Source of the DNA: Lepidodermella squamata | Lineage: Eukaryota; Animalia; Gastrotricha | Assembly (NCBI GenBank): GCA_047495785.1 | Contig: JBLDXI010000024.1 | Span: 2,604,001-2,668,000, forward strand | Length of the DNA: 64,000 nucleotides | Direction of reading: 5' to 3' | Part shown: piece after piece, positions 39,039 to 63,097 of the stretch | Layout of the letters: each line of letters begins with the position of its first letter | Position numbering within the stretch: position 1 is the stretch's first letter | The notes under the pieces: generated by a model | The model's input: only the letters and a program-made list of their open reading frames with translations | Databases searched by the model: none | What the model was told of the DNA's origin: nothing | Position numbers and translations under genes: made by a program

Positions 39039-42000
39039 ATGCTGACGAAAAATATCAAATCGAAATTGGCGACAATAAAGGCGTTTTCTTCGTCAAGTTC
39101 GATGGATGTCGACGACAAGTCGCAACAAGCGAAACGTGCAGAAGAGGTACTTTCGAAACGTTGCATTCTCAACTGTATTGGTTATATTGTTTTAATGAAA
39201 ACGTGATAATTCAATTATATTTGCTATAGGCAAATCGAGCCGCTGCGATGGCGAAACCGCAGGTTAAAAAATTCCCGCGAGATGAAAGGCGAATCACAGA
39301 TATGGTTTGTATTTATTTTTAATTTTTTTTAAATTGTTCAATATTTATGAAATTTAACAGAAAGATGAGCGTTACAAGTATGTTATCACCATTACATGCC
39401 TTATTACCGGCCTCGACCCAGACACTGTCGAGAATTTTTTCGCGTAATTTTTAAAAATTTTCCTAATTTTCGCGAATTTTAATTTTTCTTCATTTGATGA
39501 AGGTGTGATGAGAATTTTTATCAGATGGAAGAATTTATGAATGCGCGACGTGATCGGCGATTTGTGACGCTCTTCTACCAAGACGCGGTCGAAGTGGAAC
39601 CGATCACGCCAGAGGGCAAACGGCTTTTCATCGCTAACTGCTCCAGTGATGTGAGTCCTCAATAGTTTTGATTTTTTTTCATATAAAATTAAAAAAAAAA
39701 TTAAAATTTATTTTCAAGTTCCAAAATAATTTAAAAAAAATTCTGCTGAAAACATTCGATTTTCCAGAAATTTCTAGAATTGTCTAGAATGTCCTCAAAA
39801 GTTTTGATTTTATTCAAATAAAATTCCAAAAAATTTCAAGTTGAAAATGATTTAGAATAATTCTGCTGAAAATTTGTAAATTTTAATTATTTTATAATTT
39901 TTAATTTCATTGGGGAAATTTCAAAAAATTTTATAATTTTTTTAAATATTTTCACAATTTTTAGCCACTCACTGGTGTAGTCATCGCATTCTCGCGATCT
40001 TCCCAAAGCGACGATTTGAAACCAATTGTAGCCGTTAATTTACCGCAAGAAATCGCTACGTCAACATTCGACGTGTCAAAATCAACTATCCTAACGACAT
40101 TCGCCGACGTTTTAAAGCGGCAAATGTTACCGTCCCTTCGCGGGCTCGACGACTGGGGCCAATTGTCCCGCGACGGTCACGAGGATTTCCTGCTCCAACT
40201 CGATAAATTCGTCCAAATCCTGCAATCAGCCGAGGATGGAATTCGTGGGAAAACATCCCTCGCAAAAGTTGGCAATGCCGAAAACATCGAGGCGGCGAAA
40301 ACTCCGTCTGAATGCGTGCGACTCGCCGGGAATCCTGACGTAGTCGCGGATTTCGAGCAAGTCATCGACGTCTGGCTCGGGCAGATCGAGCAAGTCCTAA
40401 CTGAATCTGACCAAATGCGGCGAGAAGCCCACGACGCCGGCCCATCGGCTGAACTCATCTATTGGAAGGCTAGACTAGCGAAATTCGCGAATTTAATCGA
40501 GGAAATTCGATCGCCGCGTTGCCAGGCCGTTATTCGACTGCTCCACGTCGCCAAGTCGCGGAAAGTCGTGAAATTCCGCGAACTCGACGGCCGAGTTACT
40601 GTGGCGATGAATGAGGCTAAGGATAACGTGAAATACCTCTACACCCTGGACAGTTTTATGTCCCAACTGGCGAGATGTGGCCCGGTTCAAATGATTGAAC
40701 ACCTGCCGGGTATGATGAATGCTATCGGGATGATTTACGCGGTTTCGCAGTACTACAACACAAGCGATCGAATGACGAGTTTGTTCGTGAAAATTACGAA
40801 TCAGATGATTCGAAGTTGTAAGAATTACATCATGGGCGATGCGAGTAAAATTTGGGACATTGAACGTGTTGTCCTGATTGAGCGGGCGGAGGATTGTTGT
40901 AAGCTGAATGCAAAGTATCAGGAGACTTTTCAACGGGCGAAAGCGCGGCTGTTGGCTTCGAATACAGAGCGGCAGTTCGAATTCAGCGAAAACTACGGTA
41001 TGTTTTACTGTTTGAAGTTTGGAATTTCGAAATTAATAGCTGATTTACTAAAATGGAGGTCCGGATACGATCCAGAAGCCTCGATTTGGAAGAGTGAAAT
41101 GCCAGATGTACTCTTTGGCAGATTTTATTTCTGTTAATAAAAACAGAAGGCTACCGTAAGTGTAGTTATTTTAGACAAAAGCATGGTTTTCAGCTCTGGA
41201 AAATTTTACAAAAATTTTACAAAAATTTGAAAATATCAGGGCCCACTTCCCATTCCTGTGTAAAATTTGGTAATTTCCCCATGTTACCTTGATTTTATAA
41301 GATTTTATAAGAATAGTGCGTGCTTAGGCTAAATTTGGACACTTATGGGGTAATTTTGGACACCTCATTAGCATATTCATAATCGTCGGAATGCGTGCAG
41401 AACTTGAAGCTTTTCTTGAAATTCTGAAAAAATGCGCACATGGTGCCAAGAAATTAATGACGTCATTCAAACACGATTCAAATTATGTTTTCCCGCTATT
41501 TTTAGCTCAACGCATTTATCATGTCCAAAATTGCCCCAGCCTAAACTTTGAGCTCACCTGTACAAAATCCCCAGCGCCAAATGTCCCGCATTTTTTACAA
41601 CTCGACAGTTCATAGTGTCAACGCTGCTGGTAAATTTTTTCAGAGCAATCCGCTTTCAGGTTGACCGGGAATAAAGGGGGTCCCACATCGACGTATTGAG
41701 ACATCCCACCTTTCAATTTATTTTAAAAACAGGCAAATTTCAGAATAGCTTCAATTTGGTACCGTTGGAAAGCCCGTCTTTCAGGGCACCTCTAGATTTT
41801 AATGGGAATTTTTTCAACCTCACTGATAGAACACGCACTTACGCGTAGAAGTTGTTTTGTCCTAATATAGCCTGTCCAAAATTAACCAGTGTTACGGTAC
41901 GATCCGCAGAAAAGTAGTTTATTGTTAAAACAATGATCCGACTGATACTAAGTAACAGTTTGCCTATAGACACGGGTATTTACATTTAATTCTTTCTGTA

Positions 42001-45000
42001 CAAATGATTATTTATGATTTTGCATGAGTCTTTTATCGTTGAAATGACGATGTCGCACATGAGTGACTGCGGTAGTTCGAGACGTTTTGCGAAGTCGCGG
42101 AAGAACTTGGTGATGGTACCACGGGCTCCAACGAAGAGACCGATTACTTCGAGGGAAGTTAGATTGTATCTTTCCTTGAAGTATTCTGCGCAAGGCTCGT
42201 AGTGTGCCCGTTTTTCTTTGTCGACTTCCAGGGCTTGATCTGGGCTTTTTTCGAAGCGGATGGTAGGGTCCAAGATCCACCCTTCTCTCGTGTTTTTAAA
42301 ACGACGCCTATTAATCCGTGTCCTGCCAAATAGTAGCGGTCTTCCAAATCGAGGCTTCTGGATCGTATCCGGATCAAAATGGAAATTAATATTCTGAATC
42401 TCAACTTTTCAAATACATTTCAAAGCGACCTGCTTCTCGACTCTAGAATTTATATTATGTAATTTTAACGAGCTCGAAATTCAAAGGAATTGGAGGAAAT
42501 ATTCCGAGTACCTCAGTTAAAATCGACTACATTTTATACATTAATAAAAGTAGGTATACATTTTTGCAAATATTTTCTTGCGACATCTACCGCATCATCA
42601 TATATTCGCGCACGCGCAATTAAAAGCTTCAGTCCGCAGCTAATATTTTATAATATTTATTAAGCAGTGCGCGCATCATCACGCATAATAAAACGGCGCA
42701 TCAGCTGAATAAATTTCGGACCTTAGCTCATGGTAATATTGACCGTCTAGTTTCACCGAGCAGCCCTTGTGGCCTAATGGCAAGGCGTCGGCCTCCTAAG
42801 CCGAAGATTGCGGGTTCGAGTCCCGCCGGGGGTGCAATATTTTTAGGGTTTCTCTACATTTTTTCAAAATTCGAAGTGACTAAAAAATTCAAGAAACCGA
42901 TAAACGAATTTCTTCCGCGTCGGAAATTGGTTGCTAACATAGTGAAAAATGGCCGATTTTATATACCTGAACTGAACTGATTTTTGCTACATTAAATAAA
43001 ACCCATATTCTTTCCCTCGTATCGCGAAAGTGATATTATGCGATTTCCACTGCTATTAAGTTGAAAACGCGGGATAAAAGCGGGATAATAATTGCCTCCC
43101 TTGAATAAAAGCCCCATTGAATTATTGCACAATTTCCACTAGTAGTAGCCCTGGCTATTATTCGATGAAACACGGTAGTAGAGCGTAGAGCGCTTTTTAC
43201 GTTCAATCATTCGATATACTATTTATTTTGAAATTGAATGCTAATTCAGGGTGATTCAAACAGCCCTTGTGGCCTAATGGCAAGGCGTCGGCCTCCTAAG
43301 CCGAAGATTGCGGGTTCGAGTCCCGCCGGGGGTGCAATATTTTTTCTAATTTATCACGATTTTTAATGTAAAAGTCGAAGTAGGGTGACTACAAAAAGTA
43401 TTTCGCCCCTGGTGGGACTCGAACCCACAATCTTTGAATTAGAAGTCCAACGCCTTGCCATTAGGCCACAAGGGCTGTTCAGATGATACATTCTGTACCT
43501 GAAATTTCAAAAATTCCACCTTAATGTTTTCAGTTTTCGGAAAATTTGACGCGTTCTGCATTCGCCTGAACAACGTCCTGTCCCTAATCAACACAATCGC
43601 ATGCTACTCAACACTAGGCAACGTCAAACTCGAAGGACTCGATCCTATCATCAACAAATTCAAAACCGTAGCCGAGGCGATGAGGCGTAAAACCTACGAT
43701 TTTCTAGACGTGCGAAAAACCGACGAATTCGACGCCGACTACGCCGATTTCCAGCGCCAGATCGACGCTATCAATGCCCAACTACAAAAATACGTCGACA
43801 ACTGGTTCGACAAGCCGTTGAGTGTTGAAAAATTTGTTCAACTCCTCGAAAAATTCGAAACACTACAAGGCATTCAAATTAATTTAAAGGATAAATATTC
43901 GCGAATTTTGCAGCAATTCGCTCGAGATTTGGATAATGTTCGAAAAATCTACCAGAAAAATCGACTCACCCCACCGGCGAGTCGAAACCTGCCGCCTGTC
44001 GCGTCGAAAATCGCCTGGGCCCGGCAGTTGTACATGTCAATCGAGGGGCCGATGAACCTACTCAAGGGCCGCGAGTCGTTAATTAAAGCCCCCGAGGCGA
44101 AAAAGGTCATTTCGCAATACAACAAAATCGCAGCTGTGATTACGCAATTCGAAATGCAGTACCACCAATTTTGGAGCGAGGCGGTCGATGCTGGTCTCAT
44201 CGGGCTAGCTGCGACTATATTCGTCCAACACCCGAGTACTGGGCAGATTTTCGTCAATTTTGACCCAAGGCTGTTGGAGCTATTCGAAGAAACTCGATTT
44301 ATGATAAAAATGAGGCTGAAAATTCCGCCAGCAGCCGAGGCGATTAGTACCAAAGCGACTCAGTTTAAACAATGGAAAAATGAATTTGAAGAAATTTTGC
44401 GGAGTTTTGAGAAGATTAAATCGCGAATTCCGACTATTCTCGGCCCTGTTACCAAGGTTATCAGGTCGAAATTTGAGAAAATGTTGGAGCCTGGACTACT
44501 GACTGTTACCTGGCGATCCGTTGCGATTGAGACGTTCATCAAGCAGTGCCATCAGGGTTTGAAGGAGTTCAACGATTTAGTCACCCTGATTGACGATATT
44601 GTCGAGGTGAGGATTGAGGCGAGGCTGCGCGAGGTGGCTGAGATGCCGCTGATTGAAATGCCGACGGAAGAACCGGCTGCTGTGGCTGATTTTGTATCGC
44701 AGACCGAGGAACGAGCGGCGGAAATGGCGTTGGAGATCAATTCGATCAATCGACAGGTTGAGACGTCGGTTTTGGAGCTGATCTCACTGTTGCGGAGCTT
44801 GAGCCCGGCGGCTGATTTGCATCGAAGTCACGCTAATGGGTACTTCATCTGCCGTATTGTGGCTCGGGAAATGTCGGCAATTGCCCATCGAAGGTGAGCA
44901 ACTTTGGCGAAAAGGGCTTATAATAGAATTCGAGGGTTAGGACTTCATGGGCGCTGCTAGTGTAACGGTATCATACAAGATTCCCATTCTTGTGACCCGG

Positions 45001-48000
45001 GTTCGACTCCCGGGCGGCGCATATAATTTTTATCGAAGCATGCGAAACAAATTATTGCCCTTTCAAAATGTAACAAATGTTTAATCTCAAAAATTCGTTA
45101 CGAACCAATTTCATAAAGTATGTGAAGGTTTATGTCATGTGACAAAATCTGAATTAATTTTTTCATTAGATTAGGAACCTTCAAAACCATAGAGGAATTC
45201 ACGTTCAAAACGCAAGCAACCTGTCACATTTAGTATTTCAATTATTTTTAAACTACATTTTTAAACGAATTTCTTTCCTGGGGAAATCCAAGTGAAATAT
45301 TTGCTTTGCCATTTCAGATGCATTCAAAATTTTGTTAGGTATCTGTTAGGTTTCTCAGATCAATAACAATCATCCCAATTTCGAAATTCGAATTTGTTGA
45401 AAAATAAAATTCCGCTCACTAGTGATCAGATAACATTCTGAATTCAATGCTGAAATTCTGTGAAAAATTAAAATAATTTGTGTGTTTAATTTTCTAATTT
45501 TTGAAAGAATTCAAATGAATTTGAACGACAAGATATTGAACAGCCCTTGTGGCCTAATGGCAAGGCGTTGGACTTCTAATTCAAAGATTGTGGGTTCGAG
45601 TCCCACCAGGGGCGAAATACTTTTTGTGGTCACCCTACTTCGATTTTGCATTAAAAAATCGCGAAAGATTCGAAAAAATATTGCACCCCCGGCGGGACTC
45701 GAACCCGCAATCTTCGGCTTAGGAGGCCGACGCCTTGCCATTAGGCCACAAGGGCTGCTTGAATCACCCTGCATTAAGATTTTATTTAGAAAATATGAAA
45801 AATCTGCTCAAATTACTCAAAATTATGAAGGAATTGGACCCTGCCAATCATTAAAATGATGCAATTTTTATTATTCTTAAATAATTCAACCCTAATTTCA
45901 CGGACGAAATTACAGCGATAAAGCAAATGAACGTGGGGAATTAGTGGCTAAATTATTCAAGGTTAGGCAGACATGTTTTACTACGCTAAAATTTAGGCAA
46001 AAATAGGAAAAATTTCTGAAATTTACCGGATAAACAGAAATCACCTGGAAAGATTTACAGGATTCTATGAAATTTCTCTCAATTTTTAGATTTATTTTCG
46101 ATTTAAACAAGTTATGTAAATCTAAAAATCCGGCTAATTTTTAGTTTTAGTTTTTGATTTTTGAAATTCGGATTTATTGTTGAATTGACTTGCAATGAAT
46201 TTTGATTTTTAATTTTCAAGAAACAACCATCTCACCCACCTCGGAGCCAGTCAACTGAATCTGCCAAAACCAGGCAGTGCTACGGCAAGTGGCGGCCTGT
46301 CGCCGCGCGAAGGCTCAACGCCCGGCCCAAGCGACGGCGCCGAAGCGAAACCGCGCACAACGCAACGCTGCGGCGAGTGTGAAAACTGCATTTTCTTCTC
46401 CATCATGAGCCAATTCACGCAGCAAAAAACCGACGCGCTCATCCGATGCGCCGCCCTCGCCCTCGATAGCCTACGCCGGCGACTTCAGGTTCAACAGGAC
46501 TTCTACGGCAACGTGAAGGAAGGCTTCAAAATGCAACCAGTCTTCGCCGTAGACCTCACGCTTAGCATACCGAACATAGTCCTAAAGCCGAGCCTTGAGG
46601 AGATTCAACAAGCTGTATCGAAACTTACCCAACTAATCCTGAAGGTCCCGCATTCAGTCGCGCTATGGCAGCACCAGGTTCAGCAATTTCTAGCCCTTTT
46701 AAACCGGGATCCTAGCGAACTTGAGGGTGATGCCGTTCTGGCTGAGCAGCTTCAAAATCTTCACGCTCGCCAGATCAGCGACCATAAGGACGTGTTCCGC
46801 CATCTAGGCACCCTGCAGGTCATTATCAGCGCGAATCGTAATGAGGTCGATAAGGTCATTAAATCCTTAGACGTGCATTCCGACCTCTGGAGCCAAGAAC
46901 CAGCCGCAGGGGTTGCGGAGTACGAAGCTAATAAAGCCTCATATGGCGAGTACGAATCCGTCATCAAAATGTACCACGCTAGGGAGGCAACCCTAGACGA
47001 GATTCGAGCGTCCTTTCAATGTGGGCCTTTAGTCCTATTAACTGAAAAACTCCGCCTAGCCCTCGTCCAAGAAGCTAGGGCTTGGAAAATCGCGTTTTCT
47101 AAGGCGTTGAATGACAAAGCTGGTCGTCAAATGACGGATCTATTCACGTTTTTCGACTCGACTATGGTCAAATTACAACGGCCTATTAAGGATCTGGATG
47201 ATATCCGAGGCGCTATGGCTGCTTTGAAGGAGGTTCGAGATAACGAAATCTATGTCGATATGACGATTCGCCCCATTGAAGAGGCCTATGCCTTACTCAA
47301 CAAACTCGAGCTGGTATTTTCGGACGGGAATGCGGAACGGGTTGATTCTCTAGGCTACGGCTGGCGGAAGATTAGGAAGCTGACTTCAGAGGTTGGCGAT
47401 GTGTTGCTTGAGGTTCAGCCTCAGTTCAAAACTGAACTCATCGCCGGGATTAAGTCGTATGCTGATTCTGTTAAAGGCTACGTCCAGCGTTACGAAACTG
47501 CTGGGCCGATGGAGCCCGGGATTCCGCCGCGAGTTGCCTCTGAGCGAATGTCGATTTTCCAATCGGATTTTGACGATCTGTGGGGGAAGTTCATTTCCTA
47601 CAGCGGCGGGGAGGAGTTGTTTGGGCTGACAGTTACGCCGTATCCTGAGCTTCAGAAGATAAAGCGAGAACTTGGATTGCTTCAAAAGCTTTATCAGCTG
47701 TATAATCAAGTGTTGGAGTCGGTGAATGGGTACTACGACATTTGCTGGCAGGATTTGAATATTGATAAGATCAATACGGAGTTGACGGAATTTCAAAATC
47801 GCTGCCGCAAGTTGCCGAAAGCTCTGAAGGAGTGGAAGGCCTACGACACCCTTTCAAAGATGGTCAACGATTTCAGCGAGACGTGTCCACTGATGGAGCT
47901 GATGAGCAATAAAGCGGTACATTATCATTCTACAATTTTCGATTTTTATGTTTTGAGAATAAAAGCACATTTCACATTTCTGTTGCGTTTTTGTTACCTA

Positions 48001-51000
48001 TAAGTTTTTATTCTTCAATTTTAATTGGCAATTAATTAAATTCTTGGAACTAAAACGTGTCCCATAATTAACGCAAGCAAAGAAATGCAGGGAAAAGGGT
48101 TGAGAAACTCTAAAATGAGAGACGAAGTCGCATCTCATGGACAGAAAATTGTTTGAAAATTTCGAAAAAATCACGAAAATAGTCATCAAGCATGTCACTT
48201 GTTAATGGGATAAATAAATTCGGTGAAATTCGATCTAACCGGCTAAAATACCGAAAATTACCGCACCAGTAACCATCGGGGTTTTCCAGAATTTCTCCGG
48301 TAAATATTTTATTTCTTGGGTTAAATCGCGGATGAGAGATTAACTATCCTCTCGGTAGGTTCAATTTATTAAAATTCTCCCAAAAAGTTGCTGAATTGCG
48401 CATTTTCTGGGACACGCTGCAGGTCACTGAAATGAGATTTTCGAACATGAATAAATCACATTTTTTCTTTTCCGAATTTAAGCTGACTACGGATGATTTA
48501 TTTGTATTTTGTGAGACCTGAAATCCGAACAGCCCTTGTGGCCTAATGGCAAGGCGTTGGACTTCTAATTCAAAGATTGTGGGTTCGAGTCCCACCAGGG
48601 GCGAAATACTTTTTGTAGTCACCCTACTTCGATTTTACGATGAAAAATCGTGAAAATTCGGAAAAAATATTGCACCCCCGGCGGGACTCGAACCCGCAAT
48701 CTTCGGCTTAGGAGGCCGACGCCTTGCCATTAGGCCACAAGGGCTGCTTGAATCACCCGGCGTTAACATTTTATTTCAAAAAATCAACACAAAAATATAT
48801 CAATTAATTCATTTTTTTCCAGATGCAAAAGCGTCATTGGGAACGCATTGAAACGCTAGTCGGGCACAAATTCGACTACGAATCTGAAAATTTCTGCCTC
48901 CGAGACCTCATGAAAGCTCCGCTCCTAAAATACCGCGAAGACATCGAAGACATCTGCATATCAGCCGGGAAGGAAAAGGACATCGAAGCCAAACTCAAAG
49001 TCGTAATCGCCGACTGGACAACTCGCGCATTTTTATTCGCCACCTTCAAAAACAAGGGCGAATTACTGTTGAAAGGCGACATGGTTCAGGAATTAATCGC
49101 GGCTCTGGAAGACAGTCTCATGGTACTAGGATCGTTAATGTCAAACCGCTATAACGTGCCATTCAAGCCGAAAATACAAGAATGGGTGTTCAAACTGTCG
49201 ACTACGTCAGAAATCATCGAAAAATGGATGTATGTTCAAAATTTATGGGTATACCTCGAAGCCGTTTTCGTAGGCGGTGATATCGCTAAACAACTACCTG
49301 TTGAGGCGAAACGATTCTCAAATATCGATAAATCGTGGCAAAACGTTATGCGGCGGGCCCATGAAAATAGCAATGTCGTAATTTGCTGTACGGCCGATGA
49401 CACACTGGCCCAGATTTTGCCGCATTTGAGCGAGCAGTTGGAACTGTGTCAAAAATCGCTGGCCGGCTATTTGGAGAAGAAGCGGTTGCAATTTCCGCGA
49501 TTTTTCTTCGTCTCAGATCCGCAGTTGTTGGAAATTTTGGGACAGGCCAGCGATTCGCATACTATTCAGTCGCATTTACTGTCAATTTTTGACAACACGA
49601 AAAGCGTCAGATTTGATGAAAAGGTAAACAAATTCATCTTAAAAATTTGAAATTTGAATTTTTCGATTTATTTATTTGAAATTCTTTACAAGTTTTGAAG
49701 AATAAGAAAAAATTCTGAAAATTTCAAATAAACTTCTTCGCAATATTTCCGATTTCCTGCAATTTTTTTGTTTTTCAGCTATATGACAAAATTATCGCGG
49801 TTTTATCGAGCGAGGGCGAGATGATATTGTTGGAAAACTACGTCATGGCTACAGGCAATGTTGAAGCCTGGCTATCTGAGCTTCTAAAAGAGTCACGTCG
49901 ATCTCTGAATGCCGTTATCCGATCAGCATGGATAACTATTCAAGATGTCCAATCCTTCAAATTGCTCGATTTTGAAAATCAATTTCCAGCTCAAGTCGGT
50001 TTATTGGGAATTCAAATGGTTTGGACTCGTGAGTTTTCGCTGGTTTTAAAGTTCAAGAACAAAAATTGAAATTTTTCAAATTTTCAGGCGATGCCGAGGA
50101 GGCTTTGTACGCAGCTCGGCACGATAAGCGAGCAATGTTGGCCGCAAATCAGCATTTCCTCGATATTCTAAACGAATTAATCGACGTCACAACGAAGGAA
50201 TTGTCGAAATTCGAACGAATCAAATTTGAAACCCTAATCACGATTCATGTTCACCAGCGCGATATTTTCGATGATCTCGTTAAAATGCACATCAAATCGT
50301 GCTACGACTTTGAGTGGCTCAAGCAGAGCCGGTTCTACTTCCGCGAGGAGGAGGACCGATGTGTTGTCTCGATCACAAACGTCGATTTCGTGTATCAGAA
50401 CGAGTTCTTAGGCTGTACTGATCGACTTGTAATCACACCGTTAACTGATCGATGCTACATTACGTTAGCCCAGGCGCTTGGAATGGCGATGGGTGGTGCT
50501 CCTGCAGGTAAATTTTCTTGAGAGATGCGATTACGCAACAATGACCAAGCTAATTACTGCGCGCTGATCGGTTAGTGCGTTTGGCATTAGTGCGCGCGCG
50601 AGCTATTTTATTGCGCACTTTATGGCCAATGAGAGCGCGACCCAATTATTAAGCACGCGCACTAATGCCGGACGCTAATTACTGCGAAAAATGACACTTT
50701 CTTGCTGATTACTCTTTAGGGCCGGCTGGTACTGGGAAGACGGAAACCACAAAAGACATGGGCCGTTGCCTTGGCAAGTACGTAGTAGTCTTCAACTGCT
50801 CAGATCAAATGGACTACCGCGGTCTTGGCCGCATTTACAAAGGCCTAGCCCAATCCGGATCTTGGGGCTGTTTTGACGAGTTCAACCGCATTGATCTACC
50901 TGTCCTTTCCGTCGCCGCTCAACAAATTGCTATCATCCTTACGTGTAAAAAGGAGAAACGCAGCCAGTTCATCTTCACCGACGGCGATATAGTCGATATG

Positions 51001-54000
51001 GACCCGGAATTCGGCCTGTTTCTCACAATGAACCCGGGTTACGCCGGTCGACAGGAGTTGCCTGAGAATTTGAAAATCAATTTCAGGACTTGCGCGATGA
51101 TGGTGCCAGACCGGGCTATCATCATGCGGGTCAAATTAGCCTCGGCCGGTTTCCAGCAAAACGTGATGTTGTCGAAAAAATTCTACACTTTGTACAAACT
51201 TTGCGAGGAGCAATTGTCTAAACAAGTTCATTATGATTTCGGGTTACGTAACATTTTGTCTGTTCTACGCACCCTGGGCACTGTAAAGCGTGGCAATCCT
51301 AACGACCCTGAGCCAGCGATTGTCATGCGAGTTCTAAGAGATATGAATCTGTCGAAATTGGTCGATGAAGACGAGCCACTTTTCATGAGTTTGATCGACG
51401 ATTTAGGCATGGTCCTACCTAAAGCCGGTTACCCCCAGGTCGAGTCGGCTATCGATGCTCAGGTCAAGGAGTCGAAATTAATCAATCACCCTGCTTGGAC
51501 GTTGAAGTTGATTCAGCTGTATGAAACGCAACGAGTTCGGCACGGTATCATGACTTTAGGGCCGACTGGAGCTGGCAAGTCGAAATGTATCAATATTTTG
51601 CTGAAGGCCATGACAGACTGCGGTCAGCCTCATAAGGAATGGCGAATGAATCCTAAATCTATTACAGCTCCTCAAATGTTCGGTCGCTTGGACGGTTGGT
51701 TTTTTAATTTTCAACGAAATCTAATGGCATTATTCCAATTTTTCTGAATGCTTGGCCAACATTTAGACTTAATTTTAATATATATTTTTATTCGGTTCTA
51801 TGTCAATTGAGCAAACGAAAATTGAGCAACGAAAATAGAGCAAGGGCTTTTGAGCAACGATATTAGAGCAAACGAAATTAGAGCAAAACGACTTCTGAGC
51901 AAACGAAATTAGAGCAAAACGAGATTAGAGCAAAACGACACGAGAGCAAATTTAATAATTAATTGCAGCTGTTGTTTATTTTAAATAAAATTTGCTCTCG
52001 TGTCGTTTTGCTCTAATCTCGTTTTGCTCAAAAGTCGTTTTGCTCTAATTTCGTTTGCTCAGAAGTCGTTTTGCTCTAATTTCGTTTGCTCAGAAGTCGT
52101 TTTGCTCTAATTTCGTTTGCTCTAATATCGTTGCTCAAAAGCCCTTGCTCTATTTTCGTTGCTCAATTTTCGTTTGCTCAATTGACATAGAACCTTTTAT
52201 TCCCATCGATTCCTGGATTTGTTCAATTTTTCAAATTTTCAATTTTTTCAATTTTTTCAATTTTTTCAATTATTAAAACTATTAAAAATTTTTAATTTCT
52301 TTCAATTTAAACAAAAATTGAAAGTTTTTCAGATTTTTGAAATTTGTGAAGGTTTTAAAAAAATTTCAAATTTCAAGGAAATTTTATGATAATCGCCATT
52401 ACTGCTACTTTTCGACCAATTTGCACAATTTCGCGAATAAAGTACTAAGAATTGTTTGAACTGGTACTTCGAGGAGATGAATAATCGACATTTTGTTACC
52501 AAAAGTAGCTTTTCCGAAAATGGAACAAACTCAAATTTCCTATAATTTATTTTCAGTTGCAACTAACGATTGGACTGACGGCATTTTCTCAACACTTTGG
52601 CGAAAATCGCTGAAAATCAAGAAAACCGAAAATGTCTGGATCATCCTCGACGGCCCAGTCGACGCTATCTGGATCGAAAATCTCAACTCCGTACTGGACG
52701 ATAACAAAACCCTAACCCTAGCCAACGGCGATCGTATCGGCATGGCTCCGAACTGCAAACTGGTCTTCGAAGTCGATGTAATCGACAACGCCTCGCCGGC
52801 TACTGTCTCGCGAATGGGCATGGTCTACATGTCAAGTTCCCAGCTTGATTGGCAGCCTATTCTAAGGGCTTGGTTACTAAAACGGCCGCCTAATCAAGAG
52901 GCGCTGATTTTCGGGACATTCGACTGTTGCTTCACCGAACTCTACGTCTGCGTTTCTCAGGTCCTAAACCCGAAAATGAATGCGTTAGAATGCATCTACA
53001 TCCGACAGGCCTGCGATTTATTGGACGCCTTATTAGCTCCATTCGAAGATCAGCGGGACATTAATCAGGATCATTTGAAACGGCTGATAATTTTTGCGAT
53101 TATGTGGTCGCTAGGGGCGTTGCTGGAGTTGAATGATCGGCGGAAATTCGAGGAAACGTGGTACAATCTACCGGCTAGACTCCCGCTACCTAATCGGACT
53201 GATGATTCGAGTCTTTTCGAGTATGTTGTAGCTGACAATGGCGAGTGGCAGCATTGGTCTGAGAGGGTGCCTGAATTCATCTATCCGACTGATTCGACCC
53301 CGGAATACACGTCGATTCTTGTGCCGAATGTCGATAATATCAGGACGGATTTTCTGATCGATTTGATTGCGAGGCAGGGCAAGGCGGTTTTGCTGATTGG
53401 CGAGCAAGGAACGGCGAAAACTGTTATCATCAAAGGATATGGGTTGAAGTACAATCCTGAGAGGCACATGTTTAAGGTGAGTGGGACGGGGCGTGTTTAA
53501 CAGAGGCGCCGCTAGTGTAACGGTATCATACAAGATTCCCATTCTTGTGACCCGGGTTCGACTCCCGGGCGGCGCATATATACTTTTTGATACAAATATT
53601 CGCATTTTTTCATAACTCCGATAATATAAAACCAATATTCAATAAAAAAACGATGAGAGCTATTTTAATTCAAATTTCTTACTTTTCGAAGGAATTTAAA
53701 GGAATTTTAACGACCCTGAATTTCGAACAGCCCTTGTGGCCTAATGGCAAGGCGTTGGACTTCTAATTCAAAGATTGTGGGTTCGAGTCCCACCAGGGGC
53801 GAAATACTTTTTTCAGTCGCCCTACTTTGAATATTATTAAAAATAATTGTGAGAATTCGTAAAAATATTGCACCCCCGGCGGGACTCGAACCCGCAATCT
53901 TCGGCTTAGGAGGCCGACGCCTTGCCATTAGGCCACAAGGGCTGCTTGAATCACCCAGCATTAGCCATTAGCCTTAAATTTCAAACAATTGGCTCCATTT

Positions 54001-57000
54001 TAATATTGTCGCATCGAAACGCTACTGAGGCACACATACAACCGAGAATCTGATATTTGCATTTAACAATCAAAATTGAACCAAAACAGCTTCTCCTAAT
54101 CCATCTTAAAACAAAATATCCAGTTGACATCCAGTATCATTAGCTATTATGTTAAGTTCCCGAACTGCTTCAAAAACGTGTCGGAACAGCTTTGGATTGT
54201 TCAAAGCAGGTTCCATAAAGTGAAGGGCTGAAGTGGGTAGGAACAAAGAGATTTGCCGCATTCAAATACATTTCAACCATCGAAAAACCAGCAAGAATCG
54301 CAGCCTATCCCTGCCTATTCAGCTGAAATCGATAATGCAAAGAAAACTGCGGATTGTAAGCACTGCCATCAATCCTGAACACAGTTTTCTACTTCTCCAG
54401 TTGACATATTGCTTCCTTGGCTATAGTTTTAGTAAATGTGCATTCTAAGGGAACCCTGACATGTGGTACATTACTAATTACTAATATCCCTCGGGATGTA
54501 ATATGCAATTCTTGGAACTTCATTCGCAAGCCATGTTGTATTCCCTTGTGCTGACATCAAACTATGTAGAATCACGGTTACATCGATGCAACGCCAACCT
54601 TCGACTTGAATAACGCAGTAATGCATCTCTTCAGCTTGTAAATATCATTAGTAAAGCCCGGGCGGACACTTTGAATCATCGGTCCTAAAATGAACGCCAT
54701 CATGAAGATTACGGCTGTTAGCTTGTGGAATTCAGCCGTCAGAACCTGAGGCCCGAGATCTTCGTAGAAAATAACGAGAATGAACGCGATCAAAGCTGGA
54801 ACGTGGAAAATTGTGAAAGCGAGAAGGGATACGATAGATTGCTTGACAAAAAATAGCTCGCGTTTCTGCCATTCTTCGTGCATGACTCTCTGGGTCGGAG
54901 TCGCACCAGAGCGAGTCGAGCTACCTAACGTGTTGTTTTTATGTCCGCGCGAACGCGTAGGAGTCATCTGCCTCTGAATCGAATGGATTTTGCTGAAAAC
55001 TCTCCTGGCGAACAAAATCATTCAGCTTCTTTAAGCAATTTTAACCAAGACTCACCAATAGTTATAAGCTATCATTGATTCTGGCACTAGCACTACAACA
55101 ATCGCGTAGTAGACTGTGATAAGAATCGAGGAATCGTATTTGCCGAATATTCGATAGTCAAAGCTCGCGCAGATAGGTACAGCTGTGCCATTGTTCACGC
55201 CAGGTACGACTATGTACTTCACAGTGAACGATTGTAAGGGGTAGAACGAGAGAGTTGCCCATGTTAAAGAAATCAAAACCATCGAAATAACAGCAAGAAT
55301 GGCAACCTAGAAAATTCGGAAAATTACAAGCATTTCTTATTGAGCTTGATTTCCACCTTCTTTGAGTTCGATCTCGAATTCGGGTCGTTCGAGAGCAAGC
55401 ATAGTTTCCTCTCGTAGCTGATAAGCATGAAAATCCAGGGACCAGTTGATCCACAGGTGAAGAGGAACCACTGCAAGCAGACACAGCTCAGCTCACTGCC
55501 GTCCCAGAATCCAGTTCGGACTGTCATCGCGACGAGGACGGTGAAGGTGGCGCAGAAAAGGGTGCAACTAGCCGCTAAAATCGAGCTTAGAACAAGAAAA
55601 TCCCGTCGAACTTGCCTTTTTTGATAAATAACAATGTTAGCGACATTCGCGGCAGCTACAAGTAGTGTCGAAACAGAGAAAATTAGGACGAAAGTAAGTC
55701 GATGCTCGAGAGTTGTAGCTCCCAAATCGTGATACCATCCCACAAAGTAAGGCCTTGGTTCAGGGAACCCACGCTCGGGAAATTGCGCCAAAATCCACGA
55801 TTTACCAATTATTGCATAATTTGAATAATTCATTGCCGAAAGAATCTACGAGATGGAAACAAATTATAAACCTGCAACATGATGATATTACTTCAAACAG
55901 AATGTATTCTAACAATTCGACACCGTTCAAATAAAAAAATCCTCATCAACAATTCATTTGCAAATCTGGATACTTAATTCAATACTCGACTTTGAATTCC
56001 TTAAATATAGTCTGGCGTGGGATTTGAGAGACTTTAAAAGGAGGAGGTAGGTGGTTTGGAAAGCCGGATTTTAAACGGCTAAAAGCATAACTGACATTTA
56101 TTCGTCTTTATTCACGGCGGAAGTCGTGGAAAAAGGTTGATGATCAGCTAATGCAAGATAAGTTATACTGTACTCAAGTTTCAATTTTTCAACTTCCGAA
56201 GTCGGCTGCATTACACATTCCTAACTTCCAACGTCCATTAGTGAATGAGATAGTCAGAAATCAGATGGCGTATTGCTCCAGACCGCGCCTTTGGGGACAC
56301 TGACGCACAGCCAGGTGACGCAAAGCTTCGATTGTGACTCTTGAGCGGATGGAAAATTTGTGAGGTCTGACATTTTCCGAAGTGCGAGTTAATCCGCGAC
56401 GTGAACGGGCTGGGTTTCAGGATTAAGGTAAGGGTCAGGTTTAGGTCGATTAAGGGCCTTCACTTCCTTACACTTCACAATTTTCACGCGGAAAGAATTT
56501 CCTACGTGATAGTCCGCTATCATTTTCCAGCCCGAAGTGAAGAACAAAATATGCATGAAGAAACGTAAAAATTGTGGGTTACTTTTGACTCAATTGAAAC
56601 CTGGGGCGAAATACTCATACCTTAATTTTCACTCTTCTTGAATTTTCTTGCAAAAAATCATGGGCGATTGGAAAAAATAGTGCACCCCCGGCGGGACTCG
56701 AACCCGCAATCTTCGGCTTAGGAGGCCGACGCCTTGCCATTAGGCCACAAGGGCTGCTGACTTTATCCTAATCCTTGCCGCTTAATTTATTATCTATTTT
56801 TTAATTTCAGTCGTTCAATTTCTCATCTGCAACTACGCCACTCATGGTCCAACGAACAATCGAATCCTACGTCGACAAACGTGTCGGAACTACCTACGGC
56901 CCGCCCTCGGGCAAGAAAATGACCATATTCATCGACGACATCAACATGCCGATCATCAACGAATGGGGCGATCAAGTCACTAACGAAATCACGCGACAAA

Positions 57001-60000
57001 TGATGGAAAACGTCGGGTTTTACAACCTCGAAAAACCCGGTGAATTCACGTCGTTAGTCGACATTCAATTCGTAGCCGCAATGCCACACCCAGGCGGGGG
57101 TAGGAACGACATACCTAACCGGTTGAAACGCCAATTCAACATTTTCAACTGCACCCTGCCGTCGAATGCTAGTATCGACAAAATCTTTGGGACATTAGGC
57201 CTGGGCCACTTTTGCCCTGAAAGACGCTTCCAACCCCAAGTCATCGAGGTAATTCAAAAGTTGATTCCAGCCACGAGAAAATTGTGGCAAAGGGTTAAAA
57301 TTCGAATGTTGCCAACCCCGGCCAAATTTCACTACATCTTCAACCTTCGAGATCTGAGTCGAATCTGGCAGGGAATGCTGAATGTCATCGCTGATATCGT
57401 CAATACCCCAGCTATGGCCTTACTTCTTTGGAAACACGAATGTTGCCGGGTTATCTCAGACCGATTCACCATTCAACAGGATAAGGATTGGTTCGAAAAG
57501 GCGCTGAGGAATATCGTTGAGGAGGATATCGACCCGCATCTGGTGTCAGCCTTACCTCCTGATCCTATGTTTCTCGACTTTTTGAGGGAAGCCCCGGAGG
57601 CGACTGGCGAGGATGCGGATGATGTTGATTTTGAGGCGCCGAAAATTTACGAGCCAGTTACGTCGCTCGACCAGCTCGAGCATCGCCTTCACGCCTTCAT
57701 GGATCAGTACAATACCGAAGTTCGAGGGGCGAATATGGATTTGGTGTTCTTCAAAGATGCCATGTCGCATTTGCTGCGGATCTCGAGGATTATTCGTACG
57801 CCAAGGGGTAATGCCTTGTTGGTGGGTGTTGGCGGGTCTGGCAAGCAGAGTTTGACGAGATTGGCGTCGTTCATTGCCGGGTATCGGACTTTCCAGATCA
57901 CCCTCCATCGATCCTATGGCATTACTCATCTCATGGAGGATTTGAAATACCTTTTCAGGTGAAACATTAACATTTGTTTTGAATCATACTTTTCAATTTC
58001 GATTCTAGGACCGCGGGCACGGATGGTCAAGGAATAACTTTCATTTTCACGGATAACGAAATCAAAGACGAGGCTTTCCTTGAATACATGAATAACGTCC
58101 TCGCCTCGGGAGAAGTCTCTAACCTATTCGCTCGAGATGAAATCGACGAAATGATGGGTGTAAGTCTAACTCCTCTTTTCTTACTCCATCAGACCATTAG
58201 ATCCCTTGATTTTGCAGAACCTGATTCCAGTTATGAAGCGTCAATTCTCCAGGCGACCTCCAACCCCGGAAAATCTATACGACTTTTATTTGTCTCGAAT
58301 CCGAACCAACCTCCACATATGTCTGTGCTTCAGCCCGGTTGGCGAGAAATTCCGATCCCGAGCCCTCAAGTTCCCAGCCCTCATCTCGGGCTGCACCGTC
58401 GACTGGTTCACCAGATGGCCGAAAGACGCTTTACAGGCTGTCAGCCGCCATTTCTTGGCAGACCTCGAAATCGTGTGCACACCCGCTGTCAAAAACGCGT
58501 TGATGATCGTTATGGGCGAGTATCAAGACCAAGTCGCCGATGTATGCGGCGAGTATTTCGAACGCTTCCGGCGCCAAACTAGCGTCACCCCGAAATCATA
58601 CCTATCCTTCATCGCCGGGTTCAAATCGATCTACGACACGAAGAGAAATGAAATAGGGTCCATGGCATCTCGAATGAACACTGGTCTTCAAAAACTCGTT
58701 GAAGCAACCGTCTCAGTAAATGAACTAAGCAAGCTGTTGGTCGTTAAGGAAAAGGACCTAGCAATCGCATCAGCCGAAGCTGACAAGGTCTTGGCCGATG
58801 TAACGGTCTCAGCCCAAGCTGCGGAATCCGTAAAAAAGCAGGTTCAAGTCGTTAAGGACAAAGCGCAATCCCTCTACGATATAATCATGGCTGACAAAAG
58901 GACGGCAGAAGGCAAATTACAGGCGGCGAAACCTGCTTTGGCTGAGGCAGAAGCTGCTCTTCAGACTATCAAACCTGCCCATATTTCTACTGTCCGAAAA
59001 CTGGGCAAACCGCCTCATTTAATCATGAGAATCATGGATTGTGTCCTATTGCTGTTCCAGCGACACTTAGACCCCTTGACACCCGACCCTGAACGACCAT
59101 GCCCAAAGCCGTCGTGGAACGAGGCATTACGATTGATGGGCGGCAACCTTCTCAGCGGGCTTTTGAACTTCCCGAAGGATACGATTAATGAAGAAACTGT
59201 TGAATTGATGCTTCCTTATTTTGACATGGAGGACTACAACCTTGAAACTGCGAAGAAGGTTTGCGGTGACGTAGCCGGGCTTTGTTCGTGGACGAAAGCT
59301 ATGTCAACGTTTTTCGGCATCAATAAGGAAGTGTTACCATTAAAGGCGAACTTGGTCATCCAAGAGGCCAGACTCCAAGAAGCTGAGAAGAAACTCAAAA
59401 TCGCCCAAGGTCAGTTGGATGAAAAGCAAAGGGAACTAGACGCTGTGATGGCGATCTACAACGCAGCAATGGCTAGAAAACAGGCGTTAATTGACGACGC
59501 TGAGGCTTGTCGACGGAAAATGAATAATGCCGTGCTGCTGATTGATGGCCTGGCTGGGGAGAAGGTTCGTTGGACGGAATCTAGTCGGCAGTTTGACGCT
59601 CAAATTACTCGGCTTGTCGGCGATGTCCTTCTCTGTACTGGTTTCCTATCCTATGCTGGTCCTTTCAACCAAGAATTTCGAAGTTTGCTGATAAGGAGGT
59701 GGAAGAAGGAAATGATGAACCTGAAAATTCCATTCAGCGAGGATATCAAAATCATTGACGTAAGATATTTGTGAAACTTTTAGAAATCACTGAAATTCTT
59801 CGTTGCAGATGTTGGTCGACCCTGCTACTATAGGAGAATGGAATCTTCAAGGATTACCGAATGTAAGCTAGCCGAGCCCACCTTTGGCATATTCTTTGAT
59901 TAATGTTTGTTTAGGATGAGCTGTCCATTCAAAATGGTCTCATTGTCACGAAAGCCGCTCGGTATCCTCTCCTCATCGACCCTCAAGGTCAGGGTAAGAA

Positions 60001-63000: not shown

Positions 63001-63097
63001 TGATTTGACCTACATTTTCCCGCTACAATTGAAAACGGCTAAGGATCCTGATCACTGGGCTATGCGCGGAGTTGCCCTACTTTGTGACACAAAATAA
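39039..63097 (+). CDS. DNAH5: Axonemal outer-arm dynein heavy chain, DNAH5/DNAH8 type, complete multi-exon gene
   Basis: P-loops [33 protein letters not shown]; CFDEFNR; C-terminal W..RGVALLCD. The first exon (ATG 39039) is less certain. Confidence 0.95.
41154..41897. mobile_element. Tc1/mariner-type MITE with CCGTAA termini
   Basis: TA-CCGTAA..TTACGG-TA; imperfect ~27-bp TIRs and internal TTTGGACA/TGTCCAAA repeats. Confidence 0.65.
41917..42296 (-). mobile_element. 5'-truncated non-LTR retrotransposon fragment (restriction-like endonuclease, R2/NeSL-type C-terminus plus short 3' UTR)
   Basis: [29 protein letters not shown], stop at 41986, AATAAA about 65 nt downstream. Confidence 0.75.
42763..42834 (+). 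tRNA. tRNA-Arg(CCT), unpaired copy
   Basis: Cloverleaf; anticodon arm TCGGC-CT-CCT-AA-GCCGA; T-run terminator. Confidence 0.95.
43263..43334 (+). tRNA. tRNA-Arg(CCT), cassette 1
   Basis: Identical to 42763-42834. Confidence 0.95.
43404..43475 (-). tRNA. tRNA-Arg(TCT), intronless, cassette 1
   Basis: Anticodon arm TTGGA-CT-TCT-AA-TTCAA; cloverleaf. Confidence 0.95.
44951..45021 (+). tRNA. tRNA-Gly(CCC)
   Basis: Anticodon arm CAAGA-TT-CCC-AT-TCTTG; closely resembles metazoan Gly-CCC. Confidence 0.95.
45543..45614 (+). tRNA. tRNA-Arg(TCT), cassette 2
   Basis: Identical to the other TCT copies. Confidence 0.95.
45684..45755 (-). tRNA. tRNA-Arg(CCT), cassette 2
   Basis: Identical to the other CCT copies. 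Confidence 0.95.
48532..48603 (+). tRNA. tRNA-Arg(TCT), cassette 3
   Basis: Identical copy. Confidence 0.95.
48673..48744 (-). tRNA. tRNA-Arg(CCT), cassette 3
   Basis: Identical copy. Confidence 0.95.
50549..50686. repeat. Small GC-rich inverted/direct repeat (probable MITE relic) in the intron that splits the dynein P1 loop
   Basis: GCGTTTGGCATTAGTGCGCG / CGCGCACTAATGCCGGACGC inverted pair; GCTAATTACTGCG direct repeat; intron 50508-50719. Confidence 0.5.
51794..52194. mobile_element. Foldback-type palindromic element (401 bp) with arms made of ~15-bp tandem GAGCAAACGAAATTA units
   Basis: GGTTCTATGTCAATTGAGC..GCTCAATTGACATAGAACC; 8-bp TSD TTTTATTC (51786-51793, 52195-52202). Confidence 0.85.
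53506..53576 (+). tRNA. tRNA-Gly(CCC)
   Basis: Differs from the 44951 copy at one acceptor-stem base. Confidence 0.95.
53730..53801 (+). tRNA. tRNA-Arg(TCT), cassette 4
   Basis: Identical copy. Confidence 0.95.
53871..53942 (-). tRNA. tRNA-Arg(CCT), cassette 4
   Basis: Identical copy. Confidence 0.95.
54578..55833 (-). CDS. Nested antisense rhodopsin-like (class A) orphan GPCR, 3 exons
   Basis: Seven TM segments, TM1 Asn, TM3 Cys and ISYERK (DRY variant), TM4 Trp, TM6 FHVP. Two ~50-nt GT-AG introns join the three ORFs. Lies in dynein intron 53477-56810. Confidence 0.8.
56571..56615 (+). pseudogene. Decayed tRNA-Arg(TCT) remnant, cassette 5
   Basis: ATTGTGGGTT and CTGGGGCG-AAATACT (tRNA 3' end plus the cassette trailer) at the expected place, 74 nt from the CCT gene. 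Confidence 0.55.
56683..56754 (-). tRNA. tRNA-Arg(CCT), cassette 5
   Basis: Identical copy. Confidence 0.95.

What the first reader, a model, noticed from the sequence alone, without database searches (positions are those of the whole stretch)
42763..56754. A 213-bp convergent tRNA-Arg(TCT)/tRNA-Arg(CCT) cassette repeated across four introns of one dynein gene
Seen: 12 intact tRNA genes, all inside the four largest dynein introns (40998-43533, 44894-46220, 47917-48822, 53477-56810). Four cassettes have exactly 72+69+72 nt, one is inverted relative to the others, and a fifth is half-decayed. tRNA bodies are identical between copies while spacers and flanks have diverged; no TSDs are evident. 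In two introns the order is Gly(CCC), Arg(TCT), Arg(CCT). Because the copies are separated by unique exons, tandem duplication alone cannot explain them. Inference: a unit supplying both AGR decoders has spread intron to intron (transposition-like copying or gene conversion) and may couple AGA/AGG/GGG tRNA supply to the ciliary gene's chromatin state.
Basis: partly seen in the sequence, partly recalled or inferred. Interest (0 to 1): 0.82.

Follow-up and report, generated by a model that had tools for sequence, protein, structure and literature searches.

The report
Intron-nested Arg/Gly tRNA gene cluster
Twelve intact transfer-RNA genes, including a tail-to-tail tRNA-Arg pair copied into four different introns, sit inside one ciliary dynein gene of an unidentified small invertebrate. 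This looks like an ordinary, locally duplicating tRNA gene cluster and not a new kind of system.

Summary
ARAGORN and Rfam both find 12 tRNA genes (4 Arg-TCT, 6 Arg-CCT, 2 Gly-CCC), all in the four largest introns of a DNAH5-type outer-arm dynein gene.

- **Copies:** Four 213-nt convergent Arg-TCT/Arg-CCT cassettes (72+69+72 nt) exist, one of them inverted.
- **Selection:** tRNA bodies are 100% identical, while the spacers are only 65-87% identical. Every copy is therefore under selection or gene conversion.
- **Shared unit:** About 0.26-0.34 kb, with different end points in different copies. There are no target-site duplications and no terminal repeats other than the two tRNAs themselves.
- **Relatives:** The same gene in four other animals carries no tRNA gene.
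- **Best reading:** A local tRNA gene family spread by repeated short DNA-level duplication into originally short introns, then evolved by birth and death.

"Transposition-like" spread is not supported. Coupling to the ciliary gene is untested, and the dynein uses AGA/AGG codons less than neighbouring ORFs do.

Whether the cassette is confined to this gene could not be tested. Unchecked notes from this scan report similar dispersed tRNA cassettes in and among other genes of the same genome. Modest interest.

The parts
39968..63097 (+). Host gene: axonemal outer-arm dynein heavy chain of DNAH5/DNAH8 type (about 4,400 codons recovered in at least 12 exons)
   Evidence: Pfam DHC_N1, AAA_9, Dynein_heavy, AAA_lid_11 and Dynein_C. 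The best PDB match is human DNAH5, 1378 bits. Exon map from tblastn with relatives.
40998..43533 (+). Intron 1 (2,536 nt, GT..AG). It holds a TIR element, the solo Arg-CCT and the inverted cassette c1.
   Evidence: The orthologous intron in relative L001 is 60 nt and has no tRNA.
42763..42887 (+). 'Solo' copy: an intact tRNA-Arg(CCT) at 42763-42834 followed by about 50 nt of spacer-derived sequence. The TCT gene is gone.
   Evidence: Spacer remnant: 0 of 500 shuffles reach the score.
43224..43484 (-). Cassette c1, inverted relative to the others: Arg-CCT 43263-43334 (+), 69-nt spacer, Arg-TCT 43404-43475 (-). The TCT 5' end lies 58 nt from the 3' splice site.
44951..45021 (+). tRNA-Gly(CCC), starting 57 nt after the 5' splice site of intron 2.
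   Evidence: 59.3 bits; T5 terminator.
45488..45795 (+). Cassette c2: Arg-TCT 45543-45614 (+), 69-nt spacer, Arg-CCT 45684-45755 (-), plus homologous flanks.
48496..48784 (+). Cassette c3: Arg-TCT 48532-48603 (+), 69-nt spacer, Arg-CCT 48673-48744 (-). The CCT 5' end lies 78 nt from the 3' splice site of intron 3.
53506..53576 (+). tRNA-Gly(CCC), starting 29 nt after the 5' splice site of intron 4. It differs by one base from the 44951 copy.
   Evidence: (61.5 bits).
53673..53989 (+). Cassette c4, the most diverged intact copy: Arg-TCT 53730-53801 (+), 69-nt spacer, Arg-CCT 53871-53942 (-).
   Evidence: Its spacer is 65-70% identical (ungapped) to the other three.
56599..56758 (+). Half-decayed cassette: a TCT remnant, a spacer of about 74 nt, and an intact Arg-CCT at 56683-56754 (-). 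The CCT 5' end lies 56 nt from the 3' splice site of intron 4.

Best explanation
This is a local family of nuclear, Pol III-type tRNA genes (Arg-UCU, Arg-CCU and Gly-CCC, which read AGA, AGG and GGG) nested in introns of a dynein gene.

A tail-to-tail Arg-TCT/Arg-CCT pair of about 0.26-0.34 kb was copied repeatedly at the DNA level into neighbouring introns that were originally short. The end points and the orientation differ from event to event.

The copies then evolved by birth and death:
- Selection, possibly helped by gene conversion, keeps every tRNA body identical.
- Spacers and flanks drift.
- Two copies have lost their TCT gene.

The copying step is inferred, not shown. The most likely route is repair- or replication-based ectopic copying (template switching or break repair) at a site made fragile by Pol III genes and by the cassette's long inverted repeat.

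The tRNA genes are probably transcribed on their own by Pol III. The link to dynein is positional: within this gene, introns are the only non-coding sequence in which an insert would not break the coding sequence.
For: Shown:
- 12 canonical tRNA genes, each with a T5-T6 run 6-7 nt downstream.
- 4 TCT and 6 CCT bodies are 100% identical, while the spacers are 84-87% identical among c1-c3 and 65-70% identical to c4. The flanks are 65-86% identical.
- Two decayed copies keep spacer remnants. This graded series is what repeated duplication followed by decay predicts.
- Homology is limited to the cassette plus 36-65 nt on the CCT side. About 60 nt on the TCT side is shared only by c2 and c4. The rest of the introns is unrelated.
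- No TSDs.
- The cassette as a single strand folds into a hairpin of about 85 bp (MFE -129 to -145 kcal/mol, z -15 to -20).
- DNAH5 orthologue loci of two metagenomic relatives (L001, L002), Capitella and Macrostomum contain no tRNA gene. The intron of L001 at the position of intron 1 is only 60 nt.
- At 5 of the 8 ends of the four host introns, a tRNA gene lies 29-78 nt from the splice site. This fits early insertion into short introns that later grew.
- A separate TIR element in intron 1 does have an 8-bp flanking repeat, so transposon footprints are visible in this region when present.

Background:
- 44-46% of tRNA genes are intronic in C. elegans and Drosophila (PMC4999229, PMC9249942).
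- tRNA genes cluster, turn over quickly by duplication and deletion, and are linked to replication-fork pausing and genome instability (PMC2888827).
Against: - The copying mechanism is not demonstrated. No junction microhomology could be read, because the copies are too diverged.
- Purifying selection and gene conversion cannot be told apart while the tRNA bodies are identical.
- Expression of any copy is untested.
- The genome-wide distribution of the cassette is unknown, so a larger dispersed family, possibly mobile, is not excluded.
- All four intact spacers are exactly 69 nt despite compensating indels. That might mean a constraint this model does not explain.
Confidence: 0.68

Rival explanations
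1. The cassette is a non-autonomous DNA transposon (MITE-like). Its inverted arms are the two tRNA-Arg genes. A transposase moves it, and it prefers nearby targets ('local hopping').
For: - The unit is small, AT-rich outside the tRNAs, and has inverted arms about 85 nt long at 84-86% identity.
- Copies occur in both orientations within 14 kb.
- Unchecked notes of this scan report TIR-bounded tRNA-cargo elements and a tRNA-like MITE family elsewhere in this genome.
Against: - No target-site duplications: flanking direct repeats are no longer than in shuffles.
- The ends are not uniform. The TCT-side homology runs about 60 nt in c2 and c4 but is weak or absent in c1 and c3.
- Outside the tRNAs, the sequence upstream of TCT is not significantly the inverted repeat of the sequence upstream of CCT.
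- The similarity between the arms appears to be (from my memory of human tRNA sequences, not checked here) the ordinary similarity of the two tRNA-Arg families.
Confidence: 0.1
2. The copies are old and were dispersed long ago. Their spacers look alike only because gene conversion, anchored on the identical tRNA bodies on both sides, keeps homogenising the TCT-spacer-CCT core (concerted evolution).
For: - Identity is highest in the core and falls off outside the tRNAs.
- All four spacers are exactly 69 nt.
- Follow-up notes on other tRNA blocks of this genome concluded that copies exchange sequence with one another (unchecked).
Against: - The flank upstream of CCT has no tRNA anchor on its outer side, yet it is about as similar (77-86%) as the spacer.
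- c4's spacer has diverged to 65-70%, although it is flanked by the same identical anchors.
- A simple tree ((c1,c2,c3),c4) with different duplication end points explains all segments.
Confidence: 0.15
3. The arrangement is an adaptive module. Placing AGA, AGG and GGG decoders in a cilia-specific gene ties their Pol III transcription to the host gene's chromatin, so that ciliated cells get extra supply.
For: - In C. elegans the host promoter affects an intronic tRNA gene, and host-tRNA pairings are conserved among Caenorhabditis species (PMC4999229).
- All copies are kept intact by selection or conversion.
Against: - The dynein gene uses AGA/AGG for only 22% of its Arg codons, against 34% in other long ORFs of the window. 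GGG is 21% against 19% of Gly codons.
- None of four orthologous loci carries a tRNA gene, so the pairing is not conserved.
- Another intronic Arg-UCU locus and many intronic tRNA cassettes in unrelated genes are noted in this genome (unchecked).
Confidence: 0.05
4. The introns themselves were copied (intron transposition by reverse splicing, or introner-like gain), carrying the tRNA cassette with them.
For: Introns 3 and 4 lie at positions where none of four compared orthologues has an intron.
Against: - Homology between the introns is confined to the roughly 0.3-kb cassette. The other 0.6-3 kb of each intron, including the splice-site ends, is unrelated.
- By the tblastn exon junctions, most of the tRNA-free introns of this gene also appear to lie at lineage-specific positions. 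These junctions were not checked residue by residue.
- One cassette is inverted.
Confidence: 0.02

Closest known systems
Intronic and clustered nuclear tRNA genes of invertebrates (C. elegans: 44% of 609 tRNA genes intronic, PMC4999229; Drosophila: 46% intronic and frequently clustered, PMC9249942)
   Same: Independent Pol III genes sit in either orientation inside introns of Pol II genes. Identical gene copies are kept while the flanks differ. Clusters mix isoacceptors.
   Different: Here one defined two-gene unit recurs in four separate introns of a single host gene, with two more decayed copies. I did not find this exact pattern described, but I did not search for it exhaustively.
Fast-turnover tRNA gene clusters by duplication and deletion (Bermudez-Santana et al. 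2010, PMC2888827)
   Same: tRNA genes behave like repeats, cluster within 1 kb, and show lineage-specific orientation biases (tail-to-tail pairs in Caenorhabditis and Oryza). Their positions change at about the rate of neutral sequence. They are linked to replication-fork pausing and instability.
   Different: That survey describes genome-wide statistics. It does not describe insertional copies interleaved with the unique exons of one gene.
Tandem tRNA arrays (Entamoeba as cited in PMC2888827; Arabidopsis tRNA-Cys cluster, PMC10701932; also the 20-tRNA arrays noted elsewhere in this genome)
   Same: Amplification of a fixed multi-tRNA unit, with identical tRNA bodies and diverging spacers.
   Different: This one is not head-to-tail. 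The copies lie 0.5-5 kb apart, one is inverted, and unique coding exons lie between them.
MITEs and tRNA-derived SINEs
   Same: Small, non-coding and repeated, with inverted arms (like a MITE) or a tRNA-derived body (like a SINE).
   Different: No TSDs, no uniform termini, and no A-tail or LINE-derived tail. The unit holds two convergent, fully intact tRNA genes, which one Pol III transcript could not carry.

Membership tests
Nuclear Pol III type-2 tRNA gene | Cloverleaf and sequence fit to the tRNA covariance model | tested here: met
   RF00005 scores of 59-71 bits against a gathering score of 29 for all 12 genes. ARAGORN assigns the anticodons TCT, CCT and CCC.
Nuclear Pol III type-2 tRNA gene | Oligo-T terminator shortly downstream | tested here: met
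   A T5 or T6 run begins 6-7 nt after each of the 12 genes.
Nuclear Pol III type-2 tRNA gene | Transcribed and processed to mature tRNA | not testable with these tools
Ordinary RNA-seq would not show tRNAs in any case.
Local tRNA gene cluster evolving by duplication and decay (birth and death) | Paralogous non-coding sequence (spacer and flanks) shared between copies | tested here: met
   The flank upstream of CCT matches in all six c1-c4 pairs (0 of 300 shuffles reach the score). Spacers are 65-87% identical.
Local tRNA gene cluster evolving by duplication and decay (birth and death) | Graded divergence and partly degraded members | tested here: met
   c1-c3 are closest, c4 is further away, and the half and solo copies have lost TCT but keep spacer remnants.
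Local tRNA gene cluster evolving by duplication and decay (birth and death) | Lineage-specific: absent from orthologous sites of other taxa | tested here: met
   No tRNA gene in the DNAH5 loci L001, L002, Capitella L003 or Macrostomum L004. All four are distant (64-92% amino-acid identity at best), so the timing stays open.
MITE / non-autonomous DNA transposon | Target-site duplication flanking each copy | tested here: not met
   The longest direct k-mers shared by the two 110-nt flanks are 7-8 nt, and 44-117 of 200 shuffles reach that length.
MITE / non-autonomous DNA transposon | Uniform termini with terminal inverted repeats | tested here: not met
   End points differ between copies. Outside the tRNA bodies, the two outer flanks are not significantly inverted repeats of each other.
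MITE / non-autonomous DNA transposon | Many dispersed copies genome-wide | not testable with these tools
   There is no access to the rest of the assembly. Two metagenome pattern scans found nothing, and the search of earlier findings by sequence was blank, which means nothing.
tRNA-derived SINE / retroposed copy | A single Pol III transcription unit with a 3' tail and TSDs | tested here: not met
   The unit holds two convergent genes separated by two terminators, with no TSDs.
Intron transposition / introner | Homology over the whole intron, including its ends | tested here: not met
   BLAST between the introns finds only the cassette. The intron 5' ends are unrelated.

The most novel reading that the evidence does not exclude
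The convergent Arg-TCT/Arg-CCT pair is a self-propagating quasi-palindrome. Its 85-bp hairpin, together with Pol III-induced fork stalling, would drive template-switch copying into nearby introns. That would make tRNA pairs a source of intron growth in this compact genome. Because each copy also forms a long double-stranded hairpin in the dynein pre-mRNA, the cluster might in addition tie tRNA supply or small-RNA production to expression of the ciliary gene.
Probability: 0.08. Interest if true: 0.6.

Novelty: new member of a known kind. Interest (0 to 1): 0.27.

Why it matters
This is a clean, datable example of how tRNA genes spread over short distances without tandem duplication. There are six copies at different stages of decay, interleaved with the unique exons of one conserved gene.

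If the mechanism could be read from fresher copies in the same genome, it would show how tRNA gene families relocate. The survey in PMC2888827 reached no firm conclusion on the mechanism of such relocation. It would also show how short introns grow.

As it stands, the locus mainly documents that intron-nested, locally duplicating tRNA clusters exist in this tRNA-rich genome too. It does not change how such clusters are understood.

Tried and rejected
   - The patterns were taken only from the spacer and the flank upstream of CCT.
   - Window-only analyses (repeat finder, and the sandbox scripts) still read the window as a whole.
2. **Two metagenome scans.** One used a spacer pattern. The other used a spacer-end / N-gap / CCT-flank pattern. 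Both gave 0 hits.
3. **A larger Gly-Arg-Arg unit of about 485 nt.** A BLAST hit of 75% over 168 nt suggested it. I rejected it because, outside the Gly tRNA body, the similarity is at shuffle level (108 of 500 shuffles).
4. **Palindrome extending into the outer flanks** (origin by inverted duplication). Not significant.
5. **Retroposition of a Pol III read-through transcript.** I rejected it because the unit contains several T4-T6 runs and two convergent genes, and has no TSDs.
6. **Intron transposition.** Rejected.
7. **Naming the organism.** The best named DNAH5 matches are spiralians at about 75% identity, and none is close. The window's own proteins are not in the protein collection. The organism stays unidentified.
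8. **Codon-demand link.** Not seen.


Full report
**What is there**

ARAGORN and Rfam's tRNA model (59-71 bits against a gathering score of 29) agree on 12 tRNA genes in the window. All lie between 42,763 and 56,754.
- Six tRNA-Arg(CCT)
- Four tRNA-Arg(TCT)
- Two tRNA-Gly(CCC)

Nothing else in the 64 kb matches the tRNA model. A window-wide repeat search finds the cassette only in this stretch. The motif upstream of CCT occurs only at the four intact cassettes, and the spacer motif only at c1-c3; c4's spacer is too diverged to match.

**The host gene**

The host is a + strand axonemal outer-arm dynein heavy chain of DNAH5/DNAH8 type.
- Pfam finds DHC_N1, AAA_9, Dynein_heavy, AAA_lid_11 and Dynein_C.
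- The best PDB match is human DNAH5, at 1378 bits over an 886-residue exon.

tblastn with relatives gives at least 12 exons from about 39,968 to 63,097. The four tRNA-bearing introns (40998-43533, 44894-46220, 47917-48822, 53477-56810) have GT..AG ends and are the four largest. By the tblastn junctions (splice sites not checked), the other introns are about 30-210 nt, except one of about 0.8 kb that holds a palindromic short tandem repeat. A 0.3-kb insert would make any small intron large, so this part of the observation carries little information.

**Anatomy of the repeat**

Four cassettes are exactly 213 nt: Arg-TCT (72 nt), a 69-nt spacer, then Arg-CCT (72 nt) on the other strand, arranged tail to tail. 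The copy at 43263-43475 is inverted.

Both terminators lie in the spacer. Every one of the 12 genes has a T5-T6 run beginning 6-7 nt downstream.

| Segment | Comparison | Identity |
|---|---|---|
| tRNA bodies | 4 TCT and 6 CCT copies | 100% (the two Gly genes differ by one base, a G-U instead of a G-C acceptor pair) |
| Spacer (ungapped) | among c1, c2, c3 | 84-87% |
| Spacer (ungapped) | c4 against the others | 65-70% |
| About 60 nt upstream of CCT | c1-c4 pairs | 77-86% |
| About 60 nt upstream of TCT | c1-c4 pairs | 65-79% |

Shuffle tests refine the limits of the unit:
- The flank upstream of CCT is homologous in all six c1-c4 pairs over 36-65 nt (0 of 300 shuffles reach the score).
- The flank upstream of TCT is clearly homologous only between c2 and c4, over about 60 nt (0 of 300).

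The unit is therefore about 0.26-0.34 kb, with end points that differ between copies.

Two more copies are decayed:
- 56599-56758 keeps a TCT remnant, a spacer of about 74 nt and an intact CCT.
- The 'solo' CCT at 42763 is followed by about 50 nt of spacer-derived sequence (0 of 500 shuffles reach the score) but has no TCT.

Neither decayed copy shares the flank upstream of CCT. Outside the cassette the introns are unrelated.

An apparent Gly-Arg-Arg super-unit from BLAST did not survive testing. Apart from the Gly tRNA body itself, the similarity is at shuffle level.

**What the pattern means**

With 13-35% divergence in adjacent neutral sequence, 144 nt of tRNA per cassette with no substitution cannot be neutral. 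Every copy is held by purifying selection, by conversion from functional copies, or by both. This is an inference.

The graded series fits repeated duplication followed by decay:
- c1-c3 are close to each other.
- c4 is older.
- The half and solo copies are the most decayed.

The exons between the copies are unique, so each event must have been an insertional copy of a short segment.

- **A transposase-type mechanism is not supported.** Direct repeats shared by the two flanks are no longer than in shuffles. The termini are ragged. Outside the tRNAs the two ends are not inverted repeats of each other. By contrast, a different element in intron 1 (41060-42373) has perfect 34-nt terminal inverted repeats and an 8-bp direct repeat just outside them. 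Transposon footprints are therefore visible here when they exist.
- **Retroposition is unlikely.** The unit has convergent genes, several oligo-T runs, no tail and no TSD.
- **Intron transposition is excluded** by the lack of intron-wide homology.

As a single strand, the cassette folds into a hairpin of about 85 bp (MFE -129 to -145 kcal/mol, z -15 to -20). This is possible because the two Arg tRNAs differ mostly by transitions. Published work links tRNA genes to replication-fork pausing and genome instability (PMC2888827). On that basis I regard ectopic, repair- or replication-based copying as the most likely route. This is an inference, not a demonstration.

**Comparison with other taxa**

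A word-based protein search with exon 2 found two metagenomic relatives. Their contigs, L001 and L002, come from ENA sample ERZ27332993. They are genomic and intron-poor.
- L001 is 64-92% identical at protein level. It has introns only at the positions of window introns 1 (60 nt) and 2 (478 nt), and then a single ORF whose called product is 3,678 residues.
- Neither relative contains any tRNA gene. Neither do the DNAH5 loci of Capitella teleta and Macrostomum lignano.

The host-tRNA pairing is therefore not conserved at these (large) distances.

Introns 3 and 4 lie at positions where none of the four has an intron. Capitella's nearest intron is 13 codons away from the position of intron 4. By the tblastn junctions the same appears to hold for most tRNA-free introns of this gene, so there is no specific link between cassettes and intron gain.

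At five of the eight ends of the host introns, a tRNA gene lies only 29-78 nt from the splice site. This fits a history in which tRNA genes entered short introns early, and later insertions enlarged them. Those later insertions include the TIR element and a nested GPCR-like gene.

**The functional idea**

An influence of the host promoter on intronic tRNA genes has been shown for sup-7 in C. elegans, and tRNA-host pairings are conserved among Caenorhabditis species (PMC4999229).

Nothing here supports it:
- The dynein uses AGA/AGG for 22% of its Arg codons, against 34% in other long ORFs of the window. GGG is 21% against 19% of Gly codons.
- The orthologues carry no tRNA genes.

**Genome context**

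These are leads, not evidence. Earlier notes of this scan on the same ~121-Mb genome describe many tandem 20-27-tRNA arrays. They also describe tRNA cassettes in introns of unrelated genes, another intronic Arg-UCU locus, TIR-bounded tRNA-cargo elements, and an eight-tRNA block in about a hundred scattered copies. That last case was judged by its follow-up to be ordinary block duplication with exchange between copies.

The scan has therefore met this kind of thing before, on other DNA of this genome. I tested the transposon lead here and found no TIR or TSD at these cassettes.

**Limits**

There is therefore no read-level confirmation and no copy count.
- Two metagenome scans with those patterns found nothing.
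- One public run (X1) holds 79% of the sampled words of 45400-46000. It may be the source sample, so it is not independent support.
- The diverged spacers make an assembly artefact very unlikely.
- The organism remains unidentified. The best named DNAH5 matches are spiralians at about 75% identity.

**Verdict**

This is a new member of a known kind: an intron-nested, locally duplicating tRNA gene cluster. It has a tidy internal chronology, an unresolved but probably repair-based copying mechanism, and modest interest.

Noticed in passing
window 41060-42373 (intron 1): A 1.3-kb element bounded by perfect 34-nt terminal inverted repeats (41060-41093 and 42340-42373). An 8-bp direct repeat (AAAATGGA) lies 2 nt outside each end. 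It looks like a non-autonomous hAT-like DNA transposon inserted 62 nt into what was probably a short intron. The inner ORFs have no Pfam match.
   Followed up: partly
window 51794-52194 (intron between exons ending ~51693 and starting ~52514): A palindromic block made of a 15-16-nt tandem repeat. The arms, 51794-51934 and 52054-52194, are 97% complementary. This roughly 0.8-kb intron, the largest without a tRNA gene, is mostly this structure.
   Followed up: no
window 54578-55833, minus strand (inside intron 4): Three consecutive ORFs (169, 76 and 147 aa) on the strand opposite to the dynein gene. They look like a nested gene. The first has a weak rhodopsin-type 7TM match (PF00001, E = 0.0021, below Pfam's cut-off).
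   Followed up: partly
window 46234-63097 compared with L001 2039-11560: Across the part of the gene covered by locus L001, the window has at least nine introns (several apparently only about 30-50 nt) where L001 has one uninterrupted reading frame (3,174 residues held in the locus; called product 3,678). By tblastn junctions, most of these positions also appear to lack an intron in Capitella and Macrostomum. This suggests strong intron turnover in this lineage.
   Followed up: partly
window 43475/43533, 44894/44951, 48744/48822, 53477/53506, 56754/56810: At five of the eight ends of the tRNA-bearing introns, a tRNA gene lies only 29-78 nt from the splice site. Both Gly(CCC) genes are the first thing after a 5' splice site.
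   Followed up: partly
window 43335-43403, 45615-45683, 48604-48672, 53802-53870: All four intact spacers are exactly 69 nt, although aligning them needs compensating 1-nt indels. The decayed copy has about 74 nt. This is either a spacing constraint between the convergent terminators or chance.
   Followed up: no
window 36060-37127 (+): An ORF with a SWIM zinc finger (PF04434, E = 1.7e-4) and a long RG/RGG-rich tail, just upstream of the dynein gene.
   Followed up: no
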